From contig NC_068983.1 in the NCBI RefSeq assembly GCF_001194135.2, positions 114,809,438 to 114,873,437 on the forward strand: a DNA stretch of 64,000 nt, given 5' to 3'. The DNA comes from Octopus bimaculoides (lineage: Eukaryota). Positions 6,738 to 61,405 of the stretch are shown here, one piece after another. Within the stretch, counting starts at the first letter, position 1, and every line of letters starts with the position of its first letter. Made by a program: the position numbers and the translations under genes. The notes under the pieces were generated by a model. The model worked only from the letters and a program-made list of their open reading frames with translations, searched no databases and was not told the origin of the DNA.

Positions 6738-6900
6738 TAACCCTTTAGCTTTCAAATTACTCTGACAAATGTAAAGTTTATTTATTCATATTATTTTCAA
6801 TTAATCATGTATTATGTCACAGATTTGAGATCTTGATGATGTCATTGTCTATTTTTAGAATGACATTGTAGGATAAGTGTGAGAGATTAGATCAGGCAAG
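6738..6900. mobile_element. Partial TTAA MITE, family 2
   Basis: ttaaccctttagc...tttttagaatgacattgtagg, homologous to the complete copies at 31051 and 61187. Confidence 0.7.
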
Positions 6901-7740: not shown

Positions 7741-8334
7741 CACACACACATATCTGTATACATGTAGACAAATATATGTGAGGGCATAAACATACATACA
7801 AGCATACATATTAAAAAGAAAGAGGGAGAAAGAGAGAGAGGGAGAGAAAGAGAGCAAGAGAGAAATGGACAGATATGCACACACACACACACACATAAGA
7901 GAAAGTCACAGAGACACACAGACAGAGTATGACCAACTGCCACAAAATAGTCTAAACTGGCTTACTGAGATCATAAACGTGATAATTACAATGGTTAAAG
8001 GTTTCTATTTGCAGGGCTGTGGTTATTCAGATTCATTGACTAGCCATACACTAGCAACACAGACAGGCAACACCTTCAAATGAATACATATACAACAATT
8101 GCCAACAGAATAGTATACAGATTGTACAGACTTACACAACTGTACATGTGTGTGTGTGTGTGTGTGCGTGCACCTAAGTACACATATAATTGAAATTACA
8201 GACACATATACATAAGTAAATGCATATAACAATCATCATCATCATCATCATCATCATATTACATCCGTTTTCTATAGTAGTATGGGTTGGGTGATTTATT
8301 GTGTGTGTGTGTGTGTGTGTATTATATATACTCA

Positions 8335-8860: not shown

Positions 8861-10708
8861 AGGCATTCTCCTACGTACATGGCTGGCACTACAGTCTCGT
8901 CAACCAAAATGTCGTCAATGTAGGAACTGGTGGCCTTCCTTATCTTCTCCTCTTTCCCTAGGATGGACTTGAGCACCATTGCCATGATTTTTGGAGCAGA
9001 ATTCAGCCCAAAACCCAGTACGTCCGGCCCTTGTGCCGCACCAGCTGATATCGCCACAGCTTGCTACTCACATGGAGCTGCAAATATGCTGACTTCAAGT
9101 CGACGATCGTCGCTGCCTTGGTCAACTGTCTCCACACACGCAACGTCTCACTACAAACGTTCGTTGCCTCGCCTCCTGTGTGGCACGATATATGTTCGTT
9201 CAGCTTCCTAAAGTCCAACACCGGTCTGACTTTTCCCTTCGTTGGCTGCACCACCGCCATCAGAGGTAGCACTCCGCTCACCACCTCCTCTTTCCACAGG
9301 ACAAGGACTCCTTCCTTGATCCATCTCTCTACCTCCTCGTCGAACTCAACCCNNNNNNNNNNNNNNNNNNNNNNNNNNNNNNNNNNNNNNNNNNNNNNNN
9401 NNNNNNNNNNNNNNNNNNNNNNNNNNNNNNNNNNNNNNNNNNNNNNNNNNNNNNNNNNNNNNNNNNNNNNNNNNNNNNNNNNNNNNNNNNNNNNNNNNNN
9501 NNNNNNNNNNNNNNNNNNNNNNNNNNNNNNNNNNNNNNNNNNNNNNNNNNNNNNNNNNNNNNNNNNNNNNNNNNNNNNNNNNNNNNNNNNNNNNNNNNNN
9601 NNNNNNNNNNNNNNNNNNNNNNNNNNNNNNNNNNNNNNNNNNNNNNNNNNNNNNNNNNNNNNNNNNNNNNNNNNNNNNNNNNNNNNNNNNNNNNNNNNNN
9701 NNNNNNNNNNNNNNNNNNNNNNNNNNNNNNNNNNNNNNNNNNNNNNNNNNNNNNNNNNNNNNNNNNNNNNCATATTCGATCATGATTACCCGTAGCCTTA
9801 GCGCCGCACTTGGCAACGCTATCTCCACACTGCAGCTGCCCTTGCAACGGATGTCTCTGCCGTCGACTGCCCGGATGCTACTCGCCCCATCCCATTTCTT
9901 CGCTACCCTTGGTGTCACGAGGGTAGTTGTGCAACCCGTGTCCACGAGGGCCTTGAGCTTCTTCCCCTCAGCCTTGACCTCGACTACGGGCAGCGTCTCC
10001 ACAAGCGCCTCTACTCGGTTGCGGGGAAAGTTTGAGAGGCAGCAACTTCCCCACGGTCGATTCCCTGGTCGCAATCATGGGTGATGTGCCCCGCCTTCCT
10101 GCATCGATAGCAGATGGGCCCCGATTTGGCGCATTCCCTAGCTACGTGCGACCCCTGACATTTAAAACACCGGCCCGAGAACGGTGCTGTCGTTGCTCGG
10201 TAGGCTTCCTCACGCTTTTCTCCAGCTGTCGTCTGTTGGAACACACCTCCGTCGCCGCCATCACTATCGTCTTTCGTCCGACGTGTTGTGTCAACAAGCG
10301 AGCTTGTGCTACAAGCTCACTGAGTGCCATCTTTCTCCCACCAGGCAACTGCTGCAATCAAATCCCTATGTCATCAGGGAACCCACTCACAAATGCCAGC
10401 TGCGTTGCTCTGTCCAGGCCTTCTCCCGTAAACCCAGCCAACGTGGCCAGCCTACGCACTTCCACCGCGTATTCATCCACCTGTTCTACCCCCCCTCCCC
10501 ATCTAACAGTCCCCAGTTTTACAAAGGCAGCGTACTCGCTCTCCGTATATGCCTCTCTCAATCTCTGCTCGATTTTCTCTGCACTTAACTTCTCTTCCTC
10601 GCCCATCTCTAAATACAGAGTCAGGGCGCTTCCTTCCAAGTATAGCACCATAAGACTTGCCACATCGCTTATCCCTTGCAGTTTCGCCACAAGCCTGATC
10701 TTTCGCAT
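8861..10708 (-). mobile_element. Inactive Ty3/Gypsy-like retrotransposon fragment (gag, protease, RT)
   Basis: Gag-like helical region, knuckles CFKCQGSHVAREC and CYRCRKAGHITHDC, protease ALVDTGC, and RT motifs RPVLDFRKLN, VDLKSAYLQL, GFGLNSAP, YIDD. There is a stop at ~10358 and frameshifts near 10190 and 9020. It ends ~20 codons after YIDD; no RNase H, integrase or LTR is visible and the 5' end lies in a gap. Confidence 0.85.
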
Positions 10709-11425
10709 NNNNNNNNNNNNNNNNNNNNNNNNNNNNNNNNNNNNNNNNNNNNNNNNNNNNNNNNNNNNNNNNNNNNNNNNNNNNNNNNNNNNNNNNNNNN
10801 NNNNNNNNNNNNNNNNNNNNNNNNNNNNNNNNNNNNNNNNNNNNNNNNNNNNNNNNNNNNNNNNNNNNNNNNNNNNNNNNNNNNNNNNNNNNNNNNNNNN
10901 NNNNNNNNNNNNNNNNNNNNNNNNNNNNNNNNNNNNNNNNNNNNNNNNNNNNNNNNNNNNNNNNNNNNNNNNNNNNNNNNNNNNNNNNNNNNNNNNNNNN
11001 NNNNNNNNNNNNNNNNNNNNNNNNNNNNNNNNNNNNNNNNNNNNNNNNNNNNNNNNNNNNNNNNNNNNNNNNNNNNNNNNNNNNNNNNNNNNNNNNNNNN
11101 NNNNNNNNNNNNNNNNNNNNNNNNNNNNNNNNNNNNNNNNNNNNNNNNNNNNNNNNNNNNNNNNNNNNNNNNNNNNNNNNNNNNNNNNNNNNNNNNNNNN
11201 NNNNNNNNNNNNNNNNNNNNNNNNNNNNNNNNNNNNNNNNNNNNNNNNNNNNNNNNNNNNNNNNNNNNNNNNNNNNNNNNNNNNNNNNNNNNNNNNNNNN
11301 NNNNNNNNNNNNNNNNNNNNNNNNNNNNNNNNNNNNNNNNNNNNNNNNNNNNNNNNNNNNNNNNNNNNNNNNNNNNNNNNNNNNNNNNNNNNNNNNNNNN
11401 NNNNNNNNNNNNNNNNNNNNNNNNN

Positions 11426-11464
<39 letters not shown>

Positions 11465-12611
11465 ACAAATACGATGGTGAAAACACACAATGCACATGTA
11501 AATACTTATGTATGGCATGTATTATATTCATAGAAATATGCTTATATTCACAGCTTTGATTTTAATTGGTTTTCTTTCTACATTTTCTTAAAAAGTAAAA
11601 TGCAGGTAATCCTTGGGAGCAATTGACAAACAAAAGGTAAAGGCAAGAAGAAGTGACAAACCATTCCTGTTAAACACATAGATAAATAAGGTTCAACGGA
11701 AGGGTTTAAGTTGTCAGTCACGTAGTTTATAAGTCTGTTCTTGTCTTATATTTTTTTTGTTTTTTGTGTGGCATTTATGTAAGTCAGTGTGAAAGCAAAA
11801 CATTCTTTTGCTTATGCCTGTATTATTGTTGTTATTGTCATTGCTGTTGTCTGCATCAGACCAGATCATTTCCAACACACCTGACATTTACAAGAAGAGT
11901 AAAGAACAAGGATATAGTGAAAAAAAAAAAAAAAGAATAATAATTAAACAATGAAAGAAAGAAGTGGAAAAGGAAATGATCTTGAAAAAGAAAAGAAAGA
12001 TGGGAAGAAAAAATGAACAGAAAAAGAACACAAACAAATGAATATAACATGAAAAATAAAAAGAGAAAATTGAAAGCCCTAAAGGAAAGGATTTTTAAGC
12101 TTCGCTTTCTACGCCCCACTGCACCTTAACTACCATTCTTTCTGTATTTCCCAATTTCTTTTCTTCCCCCAATTTTCATTTATACGTTTCTATAGACATT
12201 AACTGGGCCCAATTTCTTTGACCAGTTCTTTTCATTTTTTTTTTTATATTTTTTTCTTTTCCAGAGCAAAAGACGTTTTATTAAAGTTAAAAAACACTGG
12301 AAGACAAAATAACACCATGACCTGTAGCATCACATTCAAAGATGCTATGACAATACAACAATGTTGAATTGATTGCTTGGCCCTTTCACTTGCATTCAAT
12401 AACTCCTAACAAAAAGAAAAAAATAAGAATGGTGGTTGTGGTGGTGGTGGTGGTGGTGGTAGGGGCAATGGTTTGCAAACATGGTGACTGTACAACCAGC
12501 GCTTCTTATACCAGCATCATGTGAATCAAATCAACTAGTAGCAAAAGAGTTATTTTGTATCTTAGTACTGGGGTTGTACTGAACATAGCTGGTGGGGAAG
12601 ACATCTTTTAT

Positions 12612-13110
12612 CTTTTACTTGTTTCAGTCATTGGATTGCAGCCATGCCTTCAAGGCTTTTAGTAAAATTGACTCGAAACTTATTTTTTAAAGTCTGGTAC
12701 TAATTCTATCAGTCTCTTTTGTCAAGCTGAAGAGTGGGGGAAAAAGACACACACACACATATACACAAAAAGCTTCCACACAATGTCTGTCTATCAAATT
12801 CACTTACAAGGCATTGGTTTGCTCAGAACTATTGTAGAAGACACCTGCCCAAGGTGCTATGCAGTGGGAATGAACTCAAAATCATATAATGCAAAGCAAG
12901 CTTCTTAACCACACAGCTATATATATATATATCATTTAATACCCATTTCCCATGATAGCATGGATTGGATGGCTTGACAGGAATTGGCAAGGCTAGGGGT
13001 TACACCAGGTTCCATAGTCAGTTTTGGCTTGGTTTCTACACCTGGATATCCTTCCTAATGTCAACCACTTTACAGAGTGTACTGGATGCTTTTTATGTGT
13101 CACCTTGGTT
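12612..13110 (-). mobile_element. Diverged SINE A (12612-12917) plus diverged RTE tail (12935-13110)
   Basis: Motif similarity to intact copies elsewhere in the window. Confidence 0.7.
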
Positions 13111-13666
13111 TTAGGATCTCAATTCTGTTATGGTGGGTGGTTCCATATATGTATGAATATATGTATGTATGTACACCACTCACTATCCACTTGGCCTAAA
13201 ATTGGTGCAATGGGACAAAGCAAGGAATTAATCTCTAGCTAGGTAGTTGCTCAACCTGCTATAAGCAGTAGCTAAATCTTCTTTAAATTAAGCCCTAACA
13301 TCTGATAAATGGGAGGGCTACAATAAATAATGTAATGCTACACATATCAAGGTTAAATTTAAAAAAAAATTTATGGTTGCAATATCTTATAGGACTGCTC
13401 AGTCAAAGCTGACTTAGGGCTAGACAATAACAACAATAGAAACACCATGGATACCTACAGATTGTTACTAAATTCAGAGACAGAGAGAATAAAAGTATAA
13501 TTTTTTCAGATGATTTAACCTCCCTTTTATAGCTCATAAATGTGTCAATATTTACATCGTCAAATGTAATGCTTATTTATTCACATTATTTTGAATTAAT
13601 CGTGCATTTTCTTGTAACTTCAAGATTTAGGCGCAGGAGTGGCTGTGTGGTAAGTAGTTTGCTTAC

Positions 13667-15289
13667 TTCCGGTTTGCTCATTGCGCATGTGCGCCAGACT
13701 GGCTACTTGCTGTGAACGAAGATAGACATGGTTTTCGGCTCTGTCTATAGAAGGAAAATTTGAAGAATTTGCCAGGGTAAGTCGTTTTTGTTGCTCAGCT
13801 GGGCAGCAATTTATTGCTTCTATTTATTTTTTTAGTAAATTGTTGTCCAGCGGTGTGGCATCTTCGCTTTCCTTGGCGAGTTTTTTGTGTGTTCGTTGTA
13901 CGAACAAATTTTGTATTCGCTGTTTGTGGGAGGCGGGTTCACTTGCCCACAGTAGCCAAAATTTTTGTTTTGACTTTGAGCCAAAAAAAAAAAAGCAACT
14001 TTGAGTGAAGAAAACTTTTTGTGTCTCACTGTGCGAGANNNNNNNNNNNNNNNNNNNNNNNNNNNNNNNNNNNNNNNNNNNNNNNNNNNNNNNNNNNNNN
14101 NNNNNNNNNNNNNNNNNNNNNNNNNNNNNNNNNNNNNNNNNNNNNNNNNNNNNNNNNNNNNNNNNNNNNNNNNNNNNNNNNNNNNNNNNNNNNNNNNNNN
14201 NNNNNNNNNNNNNNNNNNNNNNNNNNNNNNNNNNNNNNNNNNNNNNNNNNNNNNNNNNNNNNNNNNNNNNNNNNNNNNNNNNNNNNNNNNNNNNNNNNNN
14301 NNNNNNNNNNNNNNNNNNNNNNNNNNNNNNNNNNNNNNNNNNNNNNNNNNNNNNNNNNNNNNNNNNNNNNNNNNNNNNNNNNNNNNNNNNNNNNNNNNNN
14401 NNNNNNNNNNNNNNNNNNNNNNNNNNNNNNNNNNNNNNNNNNNNNNNNNNNNNNNNNNNNNNNNNNNNNNNNNNNNNNNNNNNNNNNNNNNNNNNNAAGG
14501 AAGAAGGTGGGCAACAATGGTTGGCCACTGAAAATTGTGGGGGAGGAGGAGGACCTTCCAGCAAAGGCAGAAGTACGCCCTACTCCAGTGGCCCCCAAAG
14601 AAAAAGAAAAAAAAGAACGAGGCACGGCCGGTGCTCGATAGTGCACCGTCGGTGTGTCCCGACACTCCGTTGGTGGGAATTGTGCCACCAACGGAGGAAA
14701 GCAGGTCGGTGGGAATTGTGCCGCTGACAGTAGAAGCTGTGGGCTCACCCTGTGAAGAAAAGGATCGGCTAATCCTATTCCGAAAGGGATGGGCCCTGCA
14801 GAAATTTGTGAATAAAAGAAAGCGTCAGAGAGATGGAGTCCTCAACTGTACTAAGGATCCGGACTGGCCTCCGCAGGTGTCTGCGGCGGTCGTGTCGAGT
14901 AGGCACTTAAGTGCATTGGTGAATTCCTTCCCCCTCGGCGAATTCAGTATTGAAAAGTGGCCCGACCCAGACCCATCGTTTTGCTTGAGAGAAGCGAAGG
15001 CTATATCGGGCGAAAAAACCTAAGAGGACGAATGCCTCATATTGTGTAATGAAAAATCGTAAGAGGCAAATGCCTTAATTTATGACTTTTTATGTACGAG
15101 GTTCATAGCCTCAATGTGAAAATTTAATTTTATAAAGAACAGTGTTATAGAGAAGCAAAGTTCGGCGGGTGGCTTTTGCCTTCTCTCATTATACCATCAT
15201 ATTTATTATCCATTTCATCTCATTAATGTTTTTGTCCAGCCCATAGCTACTCTCTGTGTACTGCCTTTATGGCAAATTGAAATGAAATA
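13667..15289 (+). mobile_element. Unclassified non-LTR-like insertion with 15-bp TSD
   Basis: TSD aagtagtttgcttac at 13652-13666 and 15290-15304; CpG-richer 5' end ttccggtttgctcattgcgcatgtgcgcc; 3' end gaaattgaaatgaaata; 458-N gap at 14039-14496. Confidence 0.85.
14497..15023 (+). pseudogene. C-terminal part of an orphan ORF in the insertion (possibly LINE ORF1-like)
   Basis: Reads KIVGEEEDLPAKAEVRPTPVAPKEKEKK, then after an apparent frameshift in an A-run NEARPVLDSAPSV...LILFRKGWALQKFVNKRKRQRDG...KDPDWPPQV...EKT-stop. No recognisable RT or endonuclease motif; the start is lost in the gap. Confidence 0.5.
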
Positions 15290-16139
15290 AAGTAGTTTGC
15301 TTACCAACCACATGGTTCCGGGTTCAGCCCCACTGCGTGGCACCTTGGACAAGTGTCTTCTACTATAACCTCGGGCCGACCAAAGCCATGTGAGTGGATT
15401 TGGTAGACGGAAACTGAAAGAAGCCCGTCGTATATATGTATATATATATGTATGTGTGTGTTTGTGTCTGTGTTTGTCCCACCACCAATGCTTGACAACC
15501 TATGGTGGTGTGTTTACATCCCCGTAACTTAGCAATTCAGCAAAAGAGACCGATAGAATAAGTCGATTTGCTCGACTAAAGGCGGTGCTCCAGCATGGCC
15601 GCAGTCAAATGACTGAAACAAGTAAAAGAGTAAAAGAGTATTTCAATAATGTGATTGTTTATTTTTAGAATGACATTGCAGGATATGTGTGAGAAGCCTA
15701 AAATAGTTAGGCCAGATATGGATGGTTTAAATGGTAAGGGGTTAAACCAAGAGCCTTGATTTCTAAATTTAGTTTTTTGTACACTGCCTATAAACTATGT
15801 TTCCATCAGTTTAAACTCCATTTGTTCTTCTTTTTAAATGAAGCTTAGAGACATCAAGCTGATCAAAATGTAGGGTAGATGTAAGTATCAAAAGCATTTC
15901 ATCTCTTAAGATGATGTTATTAGTCTGGAAAATAAATTTGTTAATGATCAGCTCATCAGGGACATTTAGATATTTAAGGAGAGAAAATAAGAGAGACAGA
16001 CAGACAGATAAACAGACAGAGACAGTGCATTTTATAAAAAAAATGATCTGGCACCTGATCATAGTCAAGCAGACCTGTAACCTACAGCAGTATTAAGTAT
16101 TAAGTATTAAGACCAATCCTGCTGATGGTGTAATGCACT

Positions 16140-16688
16140 TGTGGCAGTGCTGCATAAAAAACACCTGTGCAGTGTCACATAAAAGTGCCTGTGTGGTGTC
16201 ACATAAAAGTTCCCATGTGGCATCATGTAAAAGCACCCATGTGGCACCACATAAAAGTGCCTGTGCAGTTTCACATAAAAACACCTGTGCAGTACCACAT
16301 ATAAGTGCCTGTGTAGTGCCACATAAAAGTTTCCCTGTGGCATCATGTAAAAGCACCCATTTGGCACCACATAAAAGTGCCTGTGCAGTTTCACATAAAA
16401 GCACCTGTGCAGTGCCACATANNNNNNNNNNTCACATAAAAGTTCCCATGTGGCATCATGTAAAAGCACCCATGTGGCACCACATAAAAGTGCCTGTGCA
16501 GTTTCACATAAAAACACCTGTGCAGTACCACATATAAGTGCCTGTGTAGTGCCACATAAAAGTTTCCATGTGGCATCATGTAAAAGCACTCATTTGGCAC
16601 CACATAAAAGTGCCTGTGCAGTTTCACATAAAAGCACCTGTGCAGTGCCACATATAAGTGCCTTTGTGGTGTCACATAAAAGCACCCA
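16140..16688 (+). repeat. Minisatellite with 24-bp unit and 120-bp and 240-bp higher-order periods
   Basis: Units such as tgtgcagtgccacataaaagcacc; 16201-16320 recurs exactly at 16434-16553; a 10-N gap lies at 16422-16431. Confidence 0.95.
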
Positions 16689-16847: not shown

Positions 16848-17689
16848 TACTGAGTATGCATGGTAACTGGACTCAGGCTAGAACTCAATTTTTAGCACTA
16901 AAACATATCGGGAGAACAAGAAAAGAAAGAAAAAAAAGAAAAAAGAAAAGAAAGAAATACAACCATAATGGTTGTGTGGTTATTCTATCTGTAGTAATAA
17001 CAAGGAGCCAATAAAAAGCTAAAAAGTTTGCCATATTGAATGTAACTTCTATTCCTTCTAGTAGCATTACAAAGAGCCAATGTTAAGCAGTCATCTATGT
17101 GTGGCTCTGAAGTCTACTGGGCAATTCAAGTTTAATTTCATTGCATTATGCCACAAGTGTCTTATACAATATCCTTGGTCAGATTCAAACCATGCAAATG
17201 AAGCTGGGTAGAAATTTGGCAACTGTACAGAAGCTTGTCAAGCTGACCTGTCCTTCTATAGTAGACTTGATCCATCAACTGTTTTAAAACCACCTCTGGT
17301 CTCTTGGGTAGTTTCAGTAGAGTCCAGTCTGCTGTAATGATTCAGGCCAGGTCTATCATCTGATGATGATCCAATAGACTGATGAAAAGGATCATTTACA
17401 TTTCAAACTTACAATTTTTTTTTTTTTTTTTGAAAAAGCCATAGTGCATGTCCAGTTTATCCTTCTACTTCTAGTAGTATTACAAACATGAACCTGATGA
17501 AAAATGACCAGCCATACTGGATGTCCATCTTCATTTGATGTCCTACAATCAATAGCACAGTACCAAGTGAGTAAACACACATGCACAAAACTAGTTTTAT
17601 AAGTGAGTTCGCCATCATCATCATCATCATCATCATCACTGGTGACCTCCTCCTCCTAATCATCATCCTCATCCTCATCATGCTGTCAT

Positions 17690-18420: not shown

Positions 18421-18980
18421 ATGCCTGCATCTATTTATGGGTAAATTAATTAATCAATTAATTAATCCACAGTGCACTATGAATGAATAAGTTAAACGAG
18501 CAGAGTGACCTATTTAGCTAAGTTTTAGTTTGAGTACAAAATAGGTAGCTATATGCTAATACTCTGTAGACAGAGGGCTATATATGGATATGCATTCTCA
18601 AACGAAGGCCATAAAAGACTAGAAACTAGTCAGATTCCACTTTTTTTCTGACCACGGACAGATAAAGCTTATAGAATAACAACTTTGTTTACTTTTCACA
18701 ACCAAGCTAAAATTGTATGCATATTAAAAGATCAATTCAATGTTACATTTAAACTTATCTACAAAAAAAAAAATCAGTCTATGAATAAATTATATGTATG
18801 TATGTGCGTGTGTACATGATTTATTATATATTTGTATCTCCGTTTTATCTAAATGTCTACATATCCAAATGGTAGACTTGTAAATATATATATATAAGAT
18901 ATAAATACATTTGTATGTCTACACAGACACACTGAGGAACACAAAAATACACAACATATATTTATATGACAATGATGAAC

Positions 18981-19018
<38 letters not shown>

Positions 19019-19109
19019 CACACATATACGCACACACACGTGTGTATACATATATATATGTATACATGTACATATATATATGTATATATGTGTATATATA
19101 TATACATAT

Positions 19110-19479
19110 AGCTTCCGCTATCTGGGCGACCAAGTTAGTAGTGGGGGTGGGTGCGCTGAAAGTGTAGCTGCTAGAATAAGAATAGCCTGGGCAAAGTTTA
19201 GAGAGCTCTTACCCCTGCTGGCGACAAAGGGACTCTCACTCAGAGTAAAAGGCAGACTGTATGACGCATGTGTACGAACAGCCATGCTACATGGCAGTGA
19301 AACATGGGCTGTAACCGCTGAGGACATACGTAAGCTCGCAAGGAATGAAGCCAGTATGCTCCGTTGGATGTGTAATGTCAATGTGAATACCCGTCAGAGT
19401 GTAAGTATCTTGAGAGAAAAGCTGAACATTAGAAGCATCAGTTGTGGTGTGCAAGAGAGATGATTGCGGTGTTATGGAC
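19110..19479 (+). mobile_element. RTE-LINE ORF2 fragment (RT subdomain 7 and thumb)
   Basis: [37 protein letters not shown]...LYDACVRTAMLHGSETWA...ASMLRWMCNV; continues into a gap. Confidence 0.9.
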
Positions 19480-20369
19480 NNNNNNNNNNNNNNNNNNNNN
19501 NNNNNNNNNNNNNNNNNNNNNNNNNNNNNNNNNNNNNNNNNNNNNNNNNNNNNNNNNNNNNNNNNNNNNNNNNNNNNNNNNNNNNNNNNNNNNNNNNNNN
19601 NNNNNNNNNNNNNNNNNNNNNNNNNNNNNNNNNNNNNNNNNNNNNNNNNNNNNNNNNNNNNNNNNNNNNNNNNNNNNNNNNNNNNNNNNNNNNNNNNNNN
19701 NNNNNNNNNNNNNNNNNNNNNNNNNNNNNNNNNNNNNNNNNNNNNNNNNNNNNNNNNNNNNNNNNNNNNNNNNNNNNNNNNNNNNNNNNNNNNNNNNNNN
19801 NNNNNNNNNNNNNNNNNNNNNNNNNNNNNNNNNNNNNNNNNNNNNNNNNNNNNNNNNNNNNNNNNNNNNNNNNNNNNNNNNNNNNNNNNNNNNNNNNNNN
19901 NNNNNNNNNNNNNNNNNNNNNNNNNNNNNNNNNNNNNNNNNNNNNNNNNNNNNNNNNNNNNNNNNNNNNNNNNNNNNNNNNNNNNNNNNNNNNNNNNNNN
20001 NNNNNNNNNNNNNNNNNNNNNNNNNNNNNNNNNNNNNNNNNNNNNNNNNNNNNNNNNNNNNNNNNNNNNNNNNNNNNNNNNNNNNNNNNNNNNNNNNNNN
20101 NNNNNNNNNNNNNNNNNNNNNNNNNNNNNNNNNNNNNNNNNNNNNNNNNNNNNNNNNNNNNNNNNNNNNNNNNNNNNNNNNNNNNNNNNNNNNNNNNNNN
20201 NNNNNNNNNNNNNNNNNNNNNNNNNNNNNNNNNNNNNNNNNNNNNNNNNNNNNNNNNNNNNNNNNNNNNNNNNNNNNNNNNNNNNNNNNNNNNNNNNNNN
20301 NNNNNNNNNNNNNNNNNNNNNNNNNNNNNNNNNNNNNNNNNNNNNNNNNNNTATATATATATATATTAT

Positions 20370-29162: not shown

Positions 29163-29618
29163 TGTATTGTTGGCACTCAGTCGCTTACGACATCGAGGGT
29201 TCCAGTCGATCTGATCAACGGAACAGCCTGCTCGTGAAATTAACGTGTAAGTGGCCGAGCAATCCACAGACACATGTACCCTTAATGTAGTTCTCGGGGA
29301 TATTCAGTGTGACACAGTGTGACAAGGCTGACCCTTTGAATTGCAGGCACAACAGAAACAGGAAGTAAGAGTGAGAGAAAGTTGTGGTGAAAGAGTACAG
29401 CAGGGTTCGCCACCATCCCCTGCCGGAGCCTCGTGGAGCTTTAGGTGTTTTCGCTCANNNNNNNNNNNNNNNNNNNNNNNNNNNNNNNNNNNNNNNNNNN
29501 NNNNNNNNNNNNNNNNNNNNNGCTCAATAAACACTCACAACGCCCGGTCTGGGAATCGAAACCGTGATTCTATGACCGCGAGTCCACTGCCCTAACCACT
29601 GGGCCATTGCGCCTCCAC
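29163..29618 (-). mobile_element. SINE B with 10-bp TSD (contains a gap)
   Basis: TSD atttgatatt at 29153-29162 and 29619-29628. Confidence 0.88.
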
Positions 29619-34228: not shown

Positions 34229-34650
34229 AAGAATCTATATTGTAAGGTGTTTGATATACCTGTATTTGTCAAATTTTATATATATGTGTATGTATATATA
34301 TTTGTGTTCTTTTTGCAGCAATAAGACTATTTTAACTCTTATTTCTAGCAATGTAGGTACTTTGGTACCCTTAGTGACAACTGAATTTTTCCTTTATGAT
34401 ATCACATTGCACCTGGCTGTTTATATTAATTCATATATCATCATCATCATCATCATTGTTTAATGTCCACTTTCCATGCTAGCATGGGTTGGACAAAGCA
34501 GAGCGGTTGTTGTAACTGACTAAAGGACAAAAGTATCCATATTTACTATCGGGATCAATTACCTGTCCTACCCCTGGGCATGGCTATGTAGGTACACTAT
34601 GCTCATAGGGTACAGATAACAGAGTCAGCAAAAGTTTATCAGGAATCAAA

Positions 34651-36400: not shown

Positions 36401-36769
36401 ATATATACATATTATATATATACACACATACACATACACACACATATACATATACAAACACACATACACACACATATATATACACACACATGTATATATA
36501 CATGCACATGTATATACACACGTACACACACACACATATTTCATTTCAATCACTGGACTGTGGTTATGCTGGAGCACCTCCTTGAGGGGTTTTAGCTGAA
36601 TCAATCAATCATAGTATTTATTCTTTAAAGCATGATACTTGTATTGGTCTTTTCCTTTGCCAAACTGCTGTTATGGGGATGTAAACAAACAAACATCAGT
36701 TGTGAAGCTTTGGTATACATACATAAATAGATATAGACAGAAAAATTCACTGGAGTGGCTGTGTGATAA

Positions 36770-37185
36770 GGCGTAGGAGTGGCTGTGTGGTAAGTAGCTT
36801 GCTTACCAACCACATGGTTCCGGGTTCAATCCCACTGCATGGCACCTTGGGCAAGTGTCTTCTACTATAGCCTCGGGCTGACCAAAGCCTTGTGAGTGGA
36901 TTTGGTAGACGGAAACTGAAAGAAGCCCGTCGTATATATGTATATGTATATATATGTGTGTGCGTGTTTGTGTGTCTGTGTTTGTGTCCCCTCCCCCCAA
37001 CATCGCTTGACAACTGATGCTGGTGTGTTTACGTCCCCGTAACTTAGCGGTTTGGCAAAAGAGATCGATAGAATTAGTACTAGGCTTACAAAGAATAAGT
37101 CCTGGGGTCGATTTGCTCGACTATAGGCGGTGCTCCAGCATGGTCACAGTCAAATGACTGAAACAAATAAAAGAGTAAAAAGAGA
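36770..37185 (+). mobile_element. SINE A, full length, preceded by a duplicated head piece
   Basis: ggagtggctgtgtgataa at 36752-36769, then the complete element. Confidence 0.9.
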
Positions 37186-42102: not shown

Positions 42103-43029
42103 GGACTATAGATAACCAAGTTACAACAGGTATATAGTCCATTTCTTGTTCTATAGTGCATTGTTATACCATTCTAAACTTTTTATTCTTTACAAACAAT
42201 ATACAATGCTTCAAGTGAACTACAATACTCTCTTAAAAAAAATAATATACAAGTAAACAATAAAAGAAAAAGAAAAATGTACAACATGCACACACACACA
42301 CACACATTATGTATGTTACATCATACTGTTTTTTTTCTAATTGAATATATACATGTGAGATGAAAATGAAACATTAGAGAAGTGTATGCATATCAACACA
42401 TCACTGCAACTGTCATCATTTTTCCATGTTTGCATAGGCCAGATGAGAGTCAAATCTCAAATTCTGTCGTTTTGCCATCTGAAAACATGTGAACCCCTTT
42501 TATAGATGGATGCCCTTCTTATCACTGCCCATTTTACAAAGTCGAGTGGAGCTGTTTTATAGCAGCAATAACAATACGGAGGTTGTCTGTGGTAGGACTA
42601 AACAGTCCATACTCAGTATCCATTTTTATCCATAGTTACTGACCTGCACTGTGGCTTATAGAATCAACATTTCCTCTAGACATTTCTTCCTTCCACTACC
42701 CAATATATTGTTGTGTGTGTGTGTGGTTGGGTATTTTCTCAAAAAGTAATGCAAATATGGGACTGATTGTTTTACTAATTGATGTAGGTTGTTTAAATTA
42801 CAGTCGGTAGAGTAGCCCTTCTTCTATACAAAGGTACTATTCAATACAGTTTCCATCACAAACAATGCATTTGAACTATCACAAAACCCAACTTCCAAAT
42901 CCTCTTTGAAAAAATTCAAGTGTGCATTGTTGTACCCATTTCTTTACAGTCGCTGAAAATCAGCGAGCACCAGATTTGAACTGTACAGCAGAGAATCGTT
43001 GACCAGTCCAGTTGATCATTTACCTGATT

Positions 43030-44850
43030 TGTTGTCCTTATGAAAGACTGCTGAATGTGGAGAATGAATGGGAGGAGGAGAGCCTGCCAAATGTTGACCC
43101 AGTTGAGGGACCAGCTACCCGAATCAACAGCACTCTGGTAGATAAAGCAATTAAGGATATGAAGTCAGGAAAAGCCCTTGGTCCATCAGGGATCACTGCT
43201 GAGATGCTTAAAATATCTGGCGGTGTGGGTTATAGTCTAGTCACCCATATCGTAAATCAGGTAATTCATGAAGGAGTCATACCTAATGACTGGTGTAGCA
43301 GCACCAGAGTCAACTGCTACAAAGGTAAAGGTGATGCTTTAAATAGAAATAACTACAGGGGTATCGAATTGCTGGATCAGGTGATGAATGTCACGGAGAG
43401 GGTCATAGCCCAACTGATTAAGGAGAGAGTTAGTTTAGATGAGATGCAGTTTGGTTTTGTGCCAGGTAGAAGCACCACTGATGCAATATTTCTGGTAAGG
43501 CAACTGCAGGAGAAATACCTAGTCAAAGATAAACTTCTGTACTTAGCTTTTGTTGATTTGGAGAAAGCCTTTGACAAGGTCAACTGATCCCTTATCTGGT
43601 GGGCAACACAGAAACTAGGGATAGATGAGTGGTTAGTAAGAGCTGTACAGGCCATGTACAGGGATGCTGTCAGTATGGTGAGGGTTGGCAACAAGTATAG
43701 TGAAGAATTCTGAATAGAAGTAGGGGTTCACTAAGGATCAGTCCTCAGCACCCCCTTATTTATCATAGTTCTCCAGGCAATAACAGAGGAATTCAAGGCA
43801 GGCTGCTTCCGGGAGCGCCTCTATGCTGATGACCTTGCTCTCACAGCTGAATCACTACCAGAACTAGAGAAAAAATTTCAGGTGTGGAAGTAAGGTCGAG
43901 AATTGAAGGGCCTTAGAGTCAATGTAAAACTGAAAGTCCTAGTAAGTAGAAAGGCAAACAAATCACAAACACCTTCAGGTAGATGGCCCTGCTCAATCTG
44001 TAGAAAATATGTAGATAGAAACTCTATAAGATGTGCCCAGTGTAAGCTATGGACACATAAGAGGTACAGCAATATCAAAGGAAGGTTAACCAGGATGATA
44101 GTTTTTGTGTGCGGCAGATGTACAGGGGCAATAAAGACTGAAGATGTTCAGAAAACAGATTCCATCACATAGGATGAGGTGGTGAACCATAGCCTTCGAA
44201 TGTTGGGCCTCACAGAGGCAATGACAAGAGACCGAGACATTTGGAGATATGCCATGATTGAGAAGACCTGGTAAATAAAGTGAGATTACAGCCATAACCT
44301 ATACCAGTGTCTTATAACCAGCCCATTTAAAAGTACTCTTGAATCATCGGGTGATACACTGTGCTTGAGAAGACCTATAGAGTCAAGTGAAATCAAAATC
44401 AAAATGGAAATTGTAGTTGTAGCTGATGCCAGTGCCACCTGGCTGGCACCCATGCTGGTGGCACGTAATAAGCACCATTCAAACATGGGTCAACGCCAGT
44501 ACCACCCGACTGGCTTCTCATACCAGTGACATGTGAAAAGCACCATCCGAACATGGTCGATGCTAGTCCCCACCCCACTGACTGGCTCCAGTGCCAGTGG
44601 CACATAAAAAGCACCATCCGAACTTGGTCGATGTCAGTGCTACCTGACTGGCTTCTGTGCTGGTGGCACATAAAAAGCACCCACTACACTCTCGGAGTGG
44701 TTGGTGTTAGGAAGGGCATCCAGATGTAGAAACATTGCCACATCAGATTGGAGCCTGGTGCAGCCTACAGGCTTGCCAGTCCCCAGTCAAACCATCTAAC
44801 TCATGCCAGCATGCAAAACGGACGTTAAACAATGATGATGATGATGATGA
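43030..44850 (+). mobile_element. Decayed, 5'-truncated and internally deleted RTE-LINE
   Basis: KALGPSGITAEMLK...NYRGI...MQFGFVPGRSTTDAIF...AFVDLEKAFD...YADD (43822-43833), then a Cys/His finger (43990-44121), a jump to the ORF2 end (~44170), a UTR with repeated ggcacataaaaagcacc motifs, and a (GAT)n tail. Several in-frame stops. Confidence 0.93.
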
Positions 44851-61186: not shown

Positions 61187-61405
61187 CCTTTTAACATTCA
61201 GATTACACAGTCAAATGTAATGCTAAATTATTCCCATTGTTTTGAATTTATCCTGCATTATCTTATAGCCTTAAGATTAGAATGATGTGATTGTTTATGT
61301 TTATAATGATATTCTAGAGTAGGTGTGAGCCAGATCTGGCCAATTTGAACATAAAGCAAGTAGAATATTTTGGCCAGATATGGCCAGTTTAAATGCTAAA
61401 CAGTT
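61187..61405. mobile_element. TTAA MITE family 2, diverged complete copy
   Basis: ttaaccttttaacattcag ... tttaaatgctaaacagttga. Confidence 0.75.

What the first reader, a model, noticed from the sequence alone, without database searches (positions are those of the whole stretch)
13667..15289. Unclassified retroposed unit with its own promoter-like 5' end, mini-intron and orphan ORF
Seen: a 15-bp TSD (aagtagtttgcttac). Both copies carry a T where other SINE A copies here have C, so the duplication is local. The 5' end has ETS-like CTTCCGG and NRF1-like TGCGCATGTGCGC motifs. A well-formed GTAAGT...TTTTTTAG 59-nt intron sits at 13777-13835. A ~175-codon ORF end has no RT or endonuclease motifs. 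A 3' hairpin (agagaagcaaag / cttttgccttctct, 15149-15186) and a (TGAAA)-type tail follow. Known: long TSDs and simple-repeat tails indicate target-primed reverse transcription; ORF1-only non-autonomous LINEs (HAL1-like) exist; Tx1-clade LINEs often target tRNA-like or other repeats. Inference: a non-autonomous, protein-coding, intron-retaining retroelement that may target SINE heads. It forms a three-level nest: MITE, then SINE A, then this unit. This is my best candidate for an undescribed system. The 458-N gap hides the ORF start and its true size is uncertain.
Basis: partly seen in the sequence, partly recalled or inferred. Interest (0 to 1): 0.7.

Follow-up and report, generated by a model that had tools for sequence, protein, structure and literature searches.

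The report
Retroposed insert of unknown origin in SINE
A piece of DNA about 1.6 kb long was copied from RNA into the head of a common short repeat, leaving a perfect 15-base duplication. Nothing visible in it shows a working gene, an enzyme or a new kind of mobile element, so it looks like an ordinary one-off insertion.

Summary
The insertion is real. AAGTAGTTTGCTTAC occurs exactly at 13652-13666 and 15290-15304. Joining the flanks rebuilds an intact SINE head, and both copies carry a T where seven other SINE copies have C. There are no terminal inverted repeats. The 3' end is A-rich, and its last 14 bases equal the 3' terminus of another SINE-like copy in the window. This points to target-primed reverse transcription.

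The rest of the reading is weak. The ORF is 163 codons (14532-15023), has no Met, and is closed by a TGA 33 nt right of the gap, so it does not run into the gap. Its length (P about 0.03-0.06) and 3-base periodicity (P 0.04) are marginal. It has no Pfam domain, no homolog among 1.84 billion representative proteins, no PDB match and no confident fold (pLDDT 40). The mini-intron (about 0.05) and the 3' hairpin (11 of 200 shuffles) are also marginal, and there is no transcript evidence. The unit is single-copy in the window.

Targeting of SINE heads rests on one event, and SINE DNA makes up 10.6% of the window. Copy number, parent locus and gap content could not be tested here.

Best reading: a retrocopy of a non-LINE RNA polymerase II transcript, mobilised in trans. 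Rival: a member of an uncatalogued non-autonomous family. Interest is low.

The parts
13553..13629 (+). Left half of the short dispersed repeat that hosts the SINE (outermost level of the nest)
   Evidence: Contiguous with 15641-15750 in uninterrupted copies at 61203-61399, 31249-31045(-), 58545-58356(-) and 6766-6884
13630..13666 (+). SINE-A head, part left of the insertion
   Evidence: Matches 12 other SINE heads in the window at 83-97% identity; alignment
13652..13666 (+). Target-site duplication, copy 1 (AAGTAGTTTGCTTAC)
   Evidence: Exact 15/15 with 15290-15304. The T variant is shared by both copies and absent from 7 other SINE copies
13667..15289 (+). The inserted unit (1,623 nt as assembled, including 458 N)
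   Evidence: Bounded by the TSD; no TIRs; no other copy in the window
13667..13694 (+). 5' end with TTCCGG and the near-palindrome GCGCATGTGCGC (13683-13694)
   Evidence: Each motif is the only such match inside the unit and is rare in the window. Function not tested
13777..13835 (+). 59-nt intron-like stretch (GTAAGT ... T-rich tract ... AG)
   Evidence: 5 of 35 GTAAGT sites in the window have an equally good acceptor 45-120 nt downstream. The joint chance is about 0.05 per unit. No transcript evidence
14039..14496 (.). Assembly gap (458 N, length only estimated)
   Evidence: All 13 other gaps in the window are at microsatellites or inside repeats
14498..14641 (+). Frame open from the gap edge to TAG (47 codons). 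It could join the long ORF only through a frameshift, for example in the A-rich run 14597-14616
   Evidence: No homolog
14529..14531 (+). In-frame TGA that closes the long ORF 33 nt right of the gap
   Evidence: Translations
14532..15023 (+). Orphan ORF, 163 codons plus TAA, no Met; contains an imperfect 31-nt direct repeat (14669-14699 / 14705-14735)
   Evidence: Length P 0.03-0.06 against shuffles. Periodicity chi2 13.3, P 0.04. No Pfam, no homolog, no PDB match, pLDDT 40. Repeat
15024..15275 (+). AT-rich 3' UTR-like region with an imperfect hairpin at 15149-15186
   Evidence: GC 0.31-0.44. Hairpin dG -15.6, z -1.56. No periodicity
15276..15289 (+). 3' terminal A-rich simple-repeat tail ATTGAAATGAAATA
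   Evidence: Identical 14-mer forms the 3' terminus of a SINE-variant copy at 36537-36550(-). No similarity extends further
15290..15304 (+). Target-site duplication, copy 2
15290..15640 (+). Rest of SINE-A, ending in (AGTAAAAG)n
15641..15750 (+). Right half of the host short repeat

Best explanation
The unit is a single RNA-mediated insertion made by a LINE's machinery acting in trans on an RNA that is not a LINE. The most likely template is an mRNA-like or lncRNA-like RNA polymerase II transcript of the host. That makes it a retrocopy, dead on arrival, and not a new mobile system.

Proposed steps:
1. A LINE endonuclease nicked the bottom strand of a SINE head at GGT|AAGTAG.
2. Reverse transcription was primed on the A-rich end (...TTGAAATGAAATA) of the bystander RNA.
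3. The cDNA ran to the RNA's 5' end, which lies in a TSS-proximal GC-rich segment (TTCCGG, GCGCATGTGCGC).
4. A second nick 15 bp away gave the duplication.

Shown: the 15-bp TSD, the exact empty site, the absence of TIRs and LTRs, the single orientation of tail, ORF and splice-like signals, and the absence of RT and EN in the visible sequence.

Inferred: which LINE acted, that the template was a host transcript, and that the ORF is either a decayed or fast-evolving coding region or no coding region at all.
For: - Exact TSD, and the SINE is rebuilt by joining the flanks. No inverted termini.
- The A-rich terminal 14-mer also ends a SINE-like copy elsewhere in the window.
- The layout is mRNA-like: a T-rich 5' part, a 47-57% GC stop-poor middle, then a 31-44% GC 3' part after the stop. 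The window background is about 35% GC.
- No RT, EN, ORF1-type or any other Pfam domain in six frames. No protein homolog in any frame. No Rfam family.
- Single copy in 64 kb, against about 20 or more SINE-A copies or fragments (32 similar stretches).
- The estimated gap of 458 nt is far too small for EN plus RT.
Against: - There is no poly(A) tail, which classic L1-type processed pseudogenes have.
- No parent gene or spliced mRNA could be looked for. No annotated protein anywhere resembles the ORF. A retrocopy of an annotated, conserved coding gene is therefore unlikely unless the coding sequence lies in the gap.
- A tail shared with a SINE terminus fits a dedicated non-autonomous element at least as well.
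- Genome-wide copy number is unknown.
Confidence: 0.5

Rival explanations
1. The unit is one copy of an uncatalogued, low- to middle-copy non-autonomous retroposon family. Such a family would carry a LINE-type terminal repeat, be transcribed from an internal RNA polymerase II promoter, and be moved by a LINE that recognises the TGAAA-like end.
For: - The terminal ATTGAAATGAAATA is identical to the 3' terminus of a SINE-variant copy at 36537(-).
- There is no poly(A).
- Rare GC-rich motifs sit at the very 5' end, as an internal promoter would.
- A modest hairpin lies upstream of the tail.
- The assembly gap lies inside the unit, and every other gap in the window is in repeat DNA.
Against: - There is no second copy, or even a fragment, in 64 kb.
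- Only 14 nt are shared with the SINE end, not a 3' domain.
- SINE-A insertions here have little or no TSD, whereas this one has 15 bp. That points to different machinery.
- The ORF is defective or spurious in a copy whose TSD is still perfect.
Confidence: 0.3
2. The unit is an autonomous LINE or Penelope-like element whose EN/RT body is hidden in a badly underestimated gap. The visible ORF would then be the C-terminal end of its polyprotein.
For: - Short-read octopus assemblies are reported to fail on full-length LINEs (PMC9115989).
- Gaps in this window fall in repeats.
- Penelope-like elements are the retroelements known to keep introns (PMC8557442, PMC4209133).
Against: - No RT, EN or GIY-YIG signal in six frames of 1,165 visible nt.
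- No hammerhead or other Rfam hit.
- No homolog of the ORF among 1.84 billion representatives. The related word-index collection holds hundreds of mollusc RT ORFs.
- The long ORF is closed by TGA before the gap.
- The gap estimate of 458 nt would have to be wrong by more than 2 kb.
Confidence: 0.07
3. The unit is not a retroposition. It would be either a scaffolding chimera of two different SINE-bearing contigs, or a DNA-level filler insertion at a staggered break.
For: The two halves are joined only through an N gap, so their continuity rests on the scaffolder.
Against: - The two contigs carry complementary parts of one SINE and overlap by exactly the 15-mer.
- Both carry the private T variant.
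- The A-rich tail sits exactly at the downstream junction.
Confidence: 0.05

Closest known systems
Processed pseudogenes / retrocopies made in trans by LINE machinery
   Same: A long perfect TSD (15 bp), a precise insertion, no terminal repeats, an mRNA-like layout, apparently full length to a TSS-like 5' end, and a single copy in the window.
   Different: It has no poly(A) tail and ends in TTGAAATGAAATA. A possible unspliced 59-nt intron remains. No parent gene is identified, and no annotated protein matches the ORF.
Stringent-type non-autonomous retroposons that share a LINE tail (SINE/LINE pairs; UnaL2 with stem-loop plus TGTAA repeats, PMC3747384)
   Same: It has a short pentamer-like terminal repeat with a hairpin upstream. 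The same terminal 14-mer ends a SINE-like copy in the window.
   Different: The hairpin lies about 100 nt from the end and is only marginally stable. No 3' domain is shared with any SINE or LINE in the window. There is no RNA polymerase III promoter or tRNA-like head. Copy number is unknown.
HAL1-like ORF1-only LINE derivatives
   Same: It is a retroposed unit of 1-2 kb with one ORF and no RT or EN.
   Different: The ORF shows no similarity to any LINE ORF1 or any other protein. It lacks a start codon. No related autonomous LINE was found.
Penelope-like elements (intron-retaining retroelements; PMC8557442, PMC4209133)
   Same: It may retain a mini-intron, and it has a TSD of variable-length type.
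   Different: There is no RT, no GIY-YIG, no terminal pLTR repeats and no hammerhead ribozyme in the visible sequence.

Membership tests
TPRT-type retroposed insertion (LINE-mediated) | Target-site duplication flanking the insert, with the empty site reconstructible | tested here: met
   15/15 TSD. The joined flanks align with 7 SINE heads, and both TSD copies carry a private T variant
TPRT-type retroposed insertion (LINE-mediated) | No terminal inverted or long terminal repeats | tested here: met
   The repeat finder on 13600-15350 finds none at the termini
TPRT-type retroposed insertion (LINE-mediated) | A-rich or simple-repeat 3' end abutting the downstream TSD | tested here: met
   ATTGAAATGAAATA at 15276-15289. 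The same 14-mer ends a SINE-like copy at 36537(-). It is short, about two units
Processed pseudogene (retrocopy of a host mRNA) | Matches a spliced host transcript or an intron-containing parent locus | not testable with these tools
   No access to the source genome or transcriptome. No annotated protein matches any frame
Processed pseudogene (retrocopy of a host mRNA) | Poly(A) tail | tested here: not met
   The sequence ends ...GAAATGAAATA directly before the TSD
Autonomous LINE | Reverse transcriptase and endonuclease domains | tested here: not met
   Pfam on six frames of the visible 1,165 nt gives nothing. This is inconclusive for the 458-N gap
HAL1-like ORF1-only element | ORF homologous to a LINE ORF1 | tested here: not met
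   No Pfam hit and no homolog in the 5.8-billion or 1.84-billion protein sets
HAL1-like ORF1-only element | Multi-copy, with ends shared with an autonomous LINE | not testable with these tools
   Single copy in the window, with no LINE in the window sharing the 3' 150 nt.
Penelope-like element | Telomerase-like RT plus GIY-YIG endonuclease | tested here: not met
   (visible sequence only)
Penelope-like element | Hammerhead ribozyme in the terminal repeats | tested here: not met
   Rfam E-value search of 12500-16500 on both strands gives 0 matches. No terminal repeats
Penelope-like element | Functional retained intron | tested here: inconclusive
   Splice-like signals are present, with a chance expectation of about 0.05 per unit. 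No RNA data
Site-specific LINE-type targeting (Tx1/R4-like) | Repeated independent insertions at the same target sequence | tested here: inconclusive
   One event. SINE-A-like DNA is 10.6% of the window. The other intact SINE-A heads are uninterrupted there; 17 matches span that region

The most novel reading that the evidence does not exclude
The unit is a copy of an undescribed cephalopod non-autonomous retroelement family. The family would carry an internal RNA polymerase II promoter, keep a spliceable mini-intron, encode a lineage-specific protein whose start lies in the gap, and be mobilised through a TGAAA-type tail, perhaps with a preference for tRNA-derived SINE heads.
Probability: 0.06. 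Interest if true: 0.55.

Novelty: new member of a known kind. Interest (0 to 1): 0.15.

Why it matters
As it stands, it matters little. It is one more RNA-mediated insertion in a repeat-dense invertebrate genome, probably an octopod's. That guess rests on the best named RT hit, Argonauta hians, and on my recollection of octopus SINEs.

Two things are mildly useful. First, a tail-less retrocopy with a 15-bp TSD lies beside SINEs that integrate with almost no TSD. This hints that at least two LINE machineries with different integration geometry were active here. Second, if genome-wide searches showed a family, it would be an example of a non-LINE RNA polymerase II transcript captured by a LINE that primes on a simple-repeat tail rather than on poly(A).

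Tried and rejected
Protein searches, all negative:
- Pfam on the ORF and on all six frames. The one hit, PTP-NADK at 15 bits on the minus strand, is far below its cut-off and is noise.
- Word-index search of 5.8 billion proteins with the ORF, and with every other open stretch on both strands concatenated.
- Exhaustive phmmer against 1.84 billion representatives, and the PDB sequence search.
- Exact-product look-up.

Structure: single-sequence AlphaFold2 gave pLDDT 40, so no fold search was run.

RNA: Rfam and ARAGORN found nothing.

Public DNA collections: one 27-mer from the unit against the JGI metagenomes and one 22-mer against IMG/VR, plus a tblastn-type scan of the metagenomes, found nothing. 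These collections are not expected to hold this genome.

Control for the negative protein results:
- An RT fragment from the window finds 734 homologs.
- The best ENA source (ERZ25069866; loci L001-L004) lacks SINE-A, so it is another species.
- The negative result therefore excludes an annotated or conserved parent protein. It does not exclude unannotated copies in the source genome.

Partner LINE:
- I took the RTE-like LINE at 43012-44172 as a possible partner because TGAAAT-like sequence follows its ORF.
- I rejected it. Its relative L003 ends in (GAT)n directly after the ORF, and the window copy has (ATG)n at about 44832-44850.
- SINE-A as a co-mobilised partner is doubtful. Its tail is (AGTAAAAG)n and its TSDs are 3 bp or less.

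Literature: a search for the SINE head sequence found nothing.

Full report
WHAT IS THERE

The window is AT-rich (about 35% GC), dense in repeats and broken by 14 N gaps. At 13630 a roughly 390-nt SINE ('SINE-A') begins. About 20 or more copies or fragments of it (32 similar stretches) lie in the window and cover 10.6% of the read bases.

This copy is interrupted after 37 nt. The 15-mer AAGTAGTTTGCTTAC lies at 13652-13666 and again at 15290-15304. Left flank plus right flank, with one copy of the 15-mer, aligns without a gap to seven other SINE heads. Both 15-mers carry a T where all seven have C. So the duplication arose at this site, and 13667-15289 is an insertion.

It has no terminal inverted or direct repeats. 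The SINE itself splits a short dispersed repeat that occurs uninterrupted at 61203-61399, 31249-31045(-), 58545-58356(-) and 6766-6884. I did not test whether the outer repeat is a MITE.

THE GAP

The gap (14039-14496) cannot be closed with these tools. What can be said:
- Both edges lie between the two TSD copies of one SINE, so they belong to one insertion site.
- On the left edge no + frame is open for more than 19 codons, and none has an ATG.
- On the right edge, frame 14497 is open to 14727 and frame 14498 to 14641. The frame of the long ORF (14499) hits TGA at 14529-14531, 33 nt from the gap.
The ORF is 163 codons (14532-15023) with no Met.
- It could continue from the gap only through a frameshift, for example in the A-rich run 14597-14616, from frame 14498.
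- The minus strand is also open across 14497-14750, so this stretch is simply poor in stops.
- All 13 other gaps in the window touch microsatellites or lie inside repeats. The gap may hide repeat DNA rather than a coding start.

IS THE ORF A GENE?

- Length: 2.8% of dinucleotide shuffles of 14497-15289, and 6% of shuffles of 14497-15023, reach 163 codons.
- Three-base periodicity: chi2 13.3, P 0.04. Of random 489-nt windows, 11% score as high. Real RT and pol fragments in the window score 15-31.
- Pfam: nothing for the ORF or for any of six frames of the visible unit.
- Homologs: none in the 5.8-billion word-index search and none in the exhaustive phmmer against 1.84 billion representatives. 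None for all other open stretches on both strands. None in the PDB.
- Structure: single-sequence AlphaFold2 gives mean pLDDT 40.
- Control: an RT fragment at 43015-43584 finds 734 homologs, the best named one from Argonauta hians, so the database does hold mollusc TE proteins. The best ENA source lacks SINE-A and is another species. Unannotated copies in the source genome are therefore not excluded.

Verdict: this is an orphan ORF with marginal statistics, defective as read.

THE OTHER FEATURES

- CTTCCGG starts at 13666, so its C is the last TSD base and is target DNA.
- GCGCATGTGCGC (13683-13694) is unique in the window. It has a 2-nt spacer between the GCGCA and TGCGC halves that the canonical NRF1 site lacks (from my own knowledge). 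Such motifs are equally expected just downstream of the TSS of a housekeeping-type gene.
- The mini-intron. In the window, 35 GTAAGT sites occur and 5 are followed by an equally strong acceptor 45-120 nt away. About 0.05 such pseudo-introns are expected per unit. This is plausible but unproven.
- The hairpin (15140-15197) has dG -15.6 kcal/mol and z -1.56. The 3' 190 nt as a whole has z -0.02.
- The tail is only TTGAAATGAAATA.
- However, ATTGAAATGAAATA is exactly the 3' terminus of a SINE-variant copy at 36537-36550(-) (BLAST E 0.028 in the window). No similarity extends further into any SINE 3' domain.
- SINE-A tails are TGAAAcaag(TAAAAGAG)n.
- Rfam and ARAGORN find nothing.

MECHANISM

A perfect long TSD, a precise empty site, no terminal repeats and an A-rich simple-repeat end abutting the downstream TSD are the signature of target-primed reverse transcription (established knowledge; PMC3747384 for tail recognition). 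ORF, splice-like signals and tail all share the + orientation. The visible sequence has no RT or EN, and the estimated gap is too small for them, so the unit was moved in trans.

Which LINE moved it is unknown:
- The RTE-like LINE in the window (43012-44172; RVT_1 plus a PHD-like ORF) ends in (ATG)n, as does its ENA relative.
- SINE-A copies integrate with 3 bp of TSD or less.
- A different LINE, one that makes long staggered cuts, is therefore likely.
- Octopus genomes are reported to carry active RTE and Dong LINEs, and short-read assemblies fail on full-length LINEs (PMC9115989).

WHICH KIND

I favour a one-off, trans-mobilised retrocopy of a non-LINE RNA polymerase II transcript (0.5). Reasons:
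- It is single-copy here.
- Its GC layout is mRNA-like: a T-rich 5' part, a 47-57% GC middle and a 31-44% GC tail region.
- It has a TSS-like 5' end and no TE protein.

The main rival (0.3) is a member of an uncatalogued non-autonomous family. In its favour are the missing poly(A), the tail shared with a SINE terminus and the gap inside the unit. A LINE or Penelope-like element hidden in the gap (0.07) and an assembly or DNA-level artefact (0.05) are unlikely.

SINE-head targeting rests on one event in a window that is one-tenth SINE. None of the other heads in the window is hit at that position.

NOVELTY AND SCORE

This is a new member of a known kind. Nothing tested supports an undescribed system. 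Interest is 0.15. The decisive test, genome-wide copy number and a parent locus, needs the source genome, which these tools do not reach.

Noticed in passing
window 13630/15640, 24776, 36770, 7360(-), 56080(-), 40711: SINE-A insertions show no TSD of 6 bp or more. The host SINE has at most 2-3 bp (tt/ttt) when compared with uninterrupted copies of its host repeat. This contrasts with the 15-bp TSD of the unit and suggests two different LINE machineries.
   Followed up: partly
window 36537-36769: A SINE-variant 3' part on the minus strand ends ...GATTGAAATGAAATA next to a (TG)n array. Directly before the full SINE at 36770 sits an 18-nt tandem copy of the SINE head (GGAGTGGCTGTGTGATAA, 36752-36769). 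It may be a 5'-junction artefact of integration.
   Followed up: no
window 43012-44850 (+); L003 10001-11895: An RTE-like LINE fragment (RVT_1, then a PHD-like zinc-finger ORF) appears to end in (ATG)n. Its ENA relative ends in (GAT)n right after the ORF. The many ATC/GAT/CAT microsatellites in the window (e.g. 204-225, 2544-2564, 8232-8257, 17613-17638, 34437-34456) may be tails of this family.
   Followed up: partly
window 9003-11518 (-): LTR-retrotransposon gag-protease-RT fragments (aspartyl protease hit) are broken by two assembly gaps.
   Followed up: partly
window 18966-19463 (+): The C-terminal part of another LINE RT-like ORF runs into the 872-N gap at 19480. Pfam gives no hit for this fragment.
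   Followed up: no
window 16157-16686 and 44400-44700: There is a tandem array with 24-nt and 120-nt periods (units like CACATAAAAGCACC...). Related units occur downstream of the RTE-like LINE, so this may be a satellite-like dispersed repeat.
   Followed up: no
window 18275, 29404, 36255: A further dispersed repeat family (GGTTCGCCACCATCC...GGAGCCTCGTGGAG...) has three copies. One of them is cut by the gap at 29458.
   Followed up: no
all 14 N gaps of the window: Thirteen gaps touch (AT)n/(AG)n microsatellites or lie inside repeats. The gap inside the unit is the only one flanked by ordinary-complexity sequence on both sides.
   Followed up: yes
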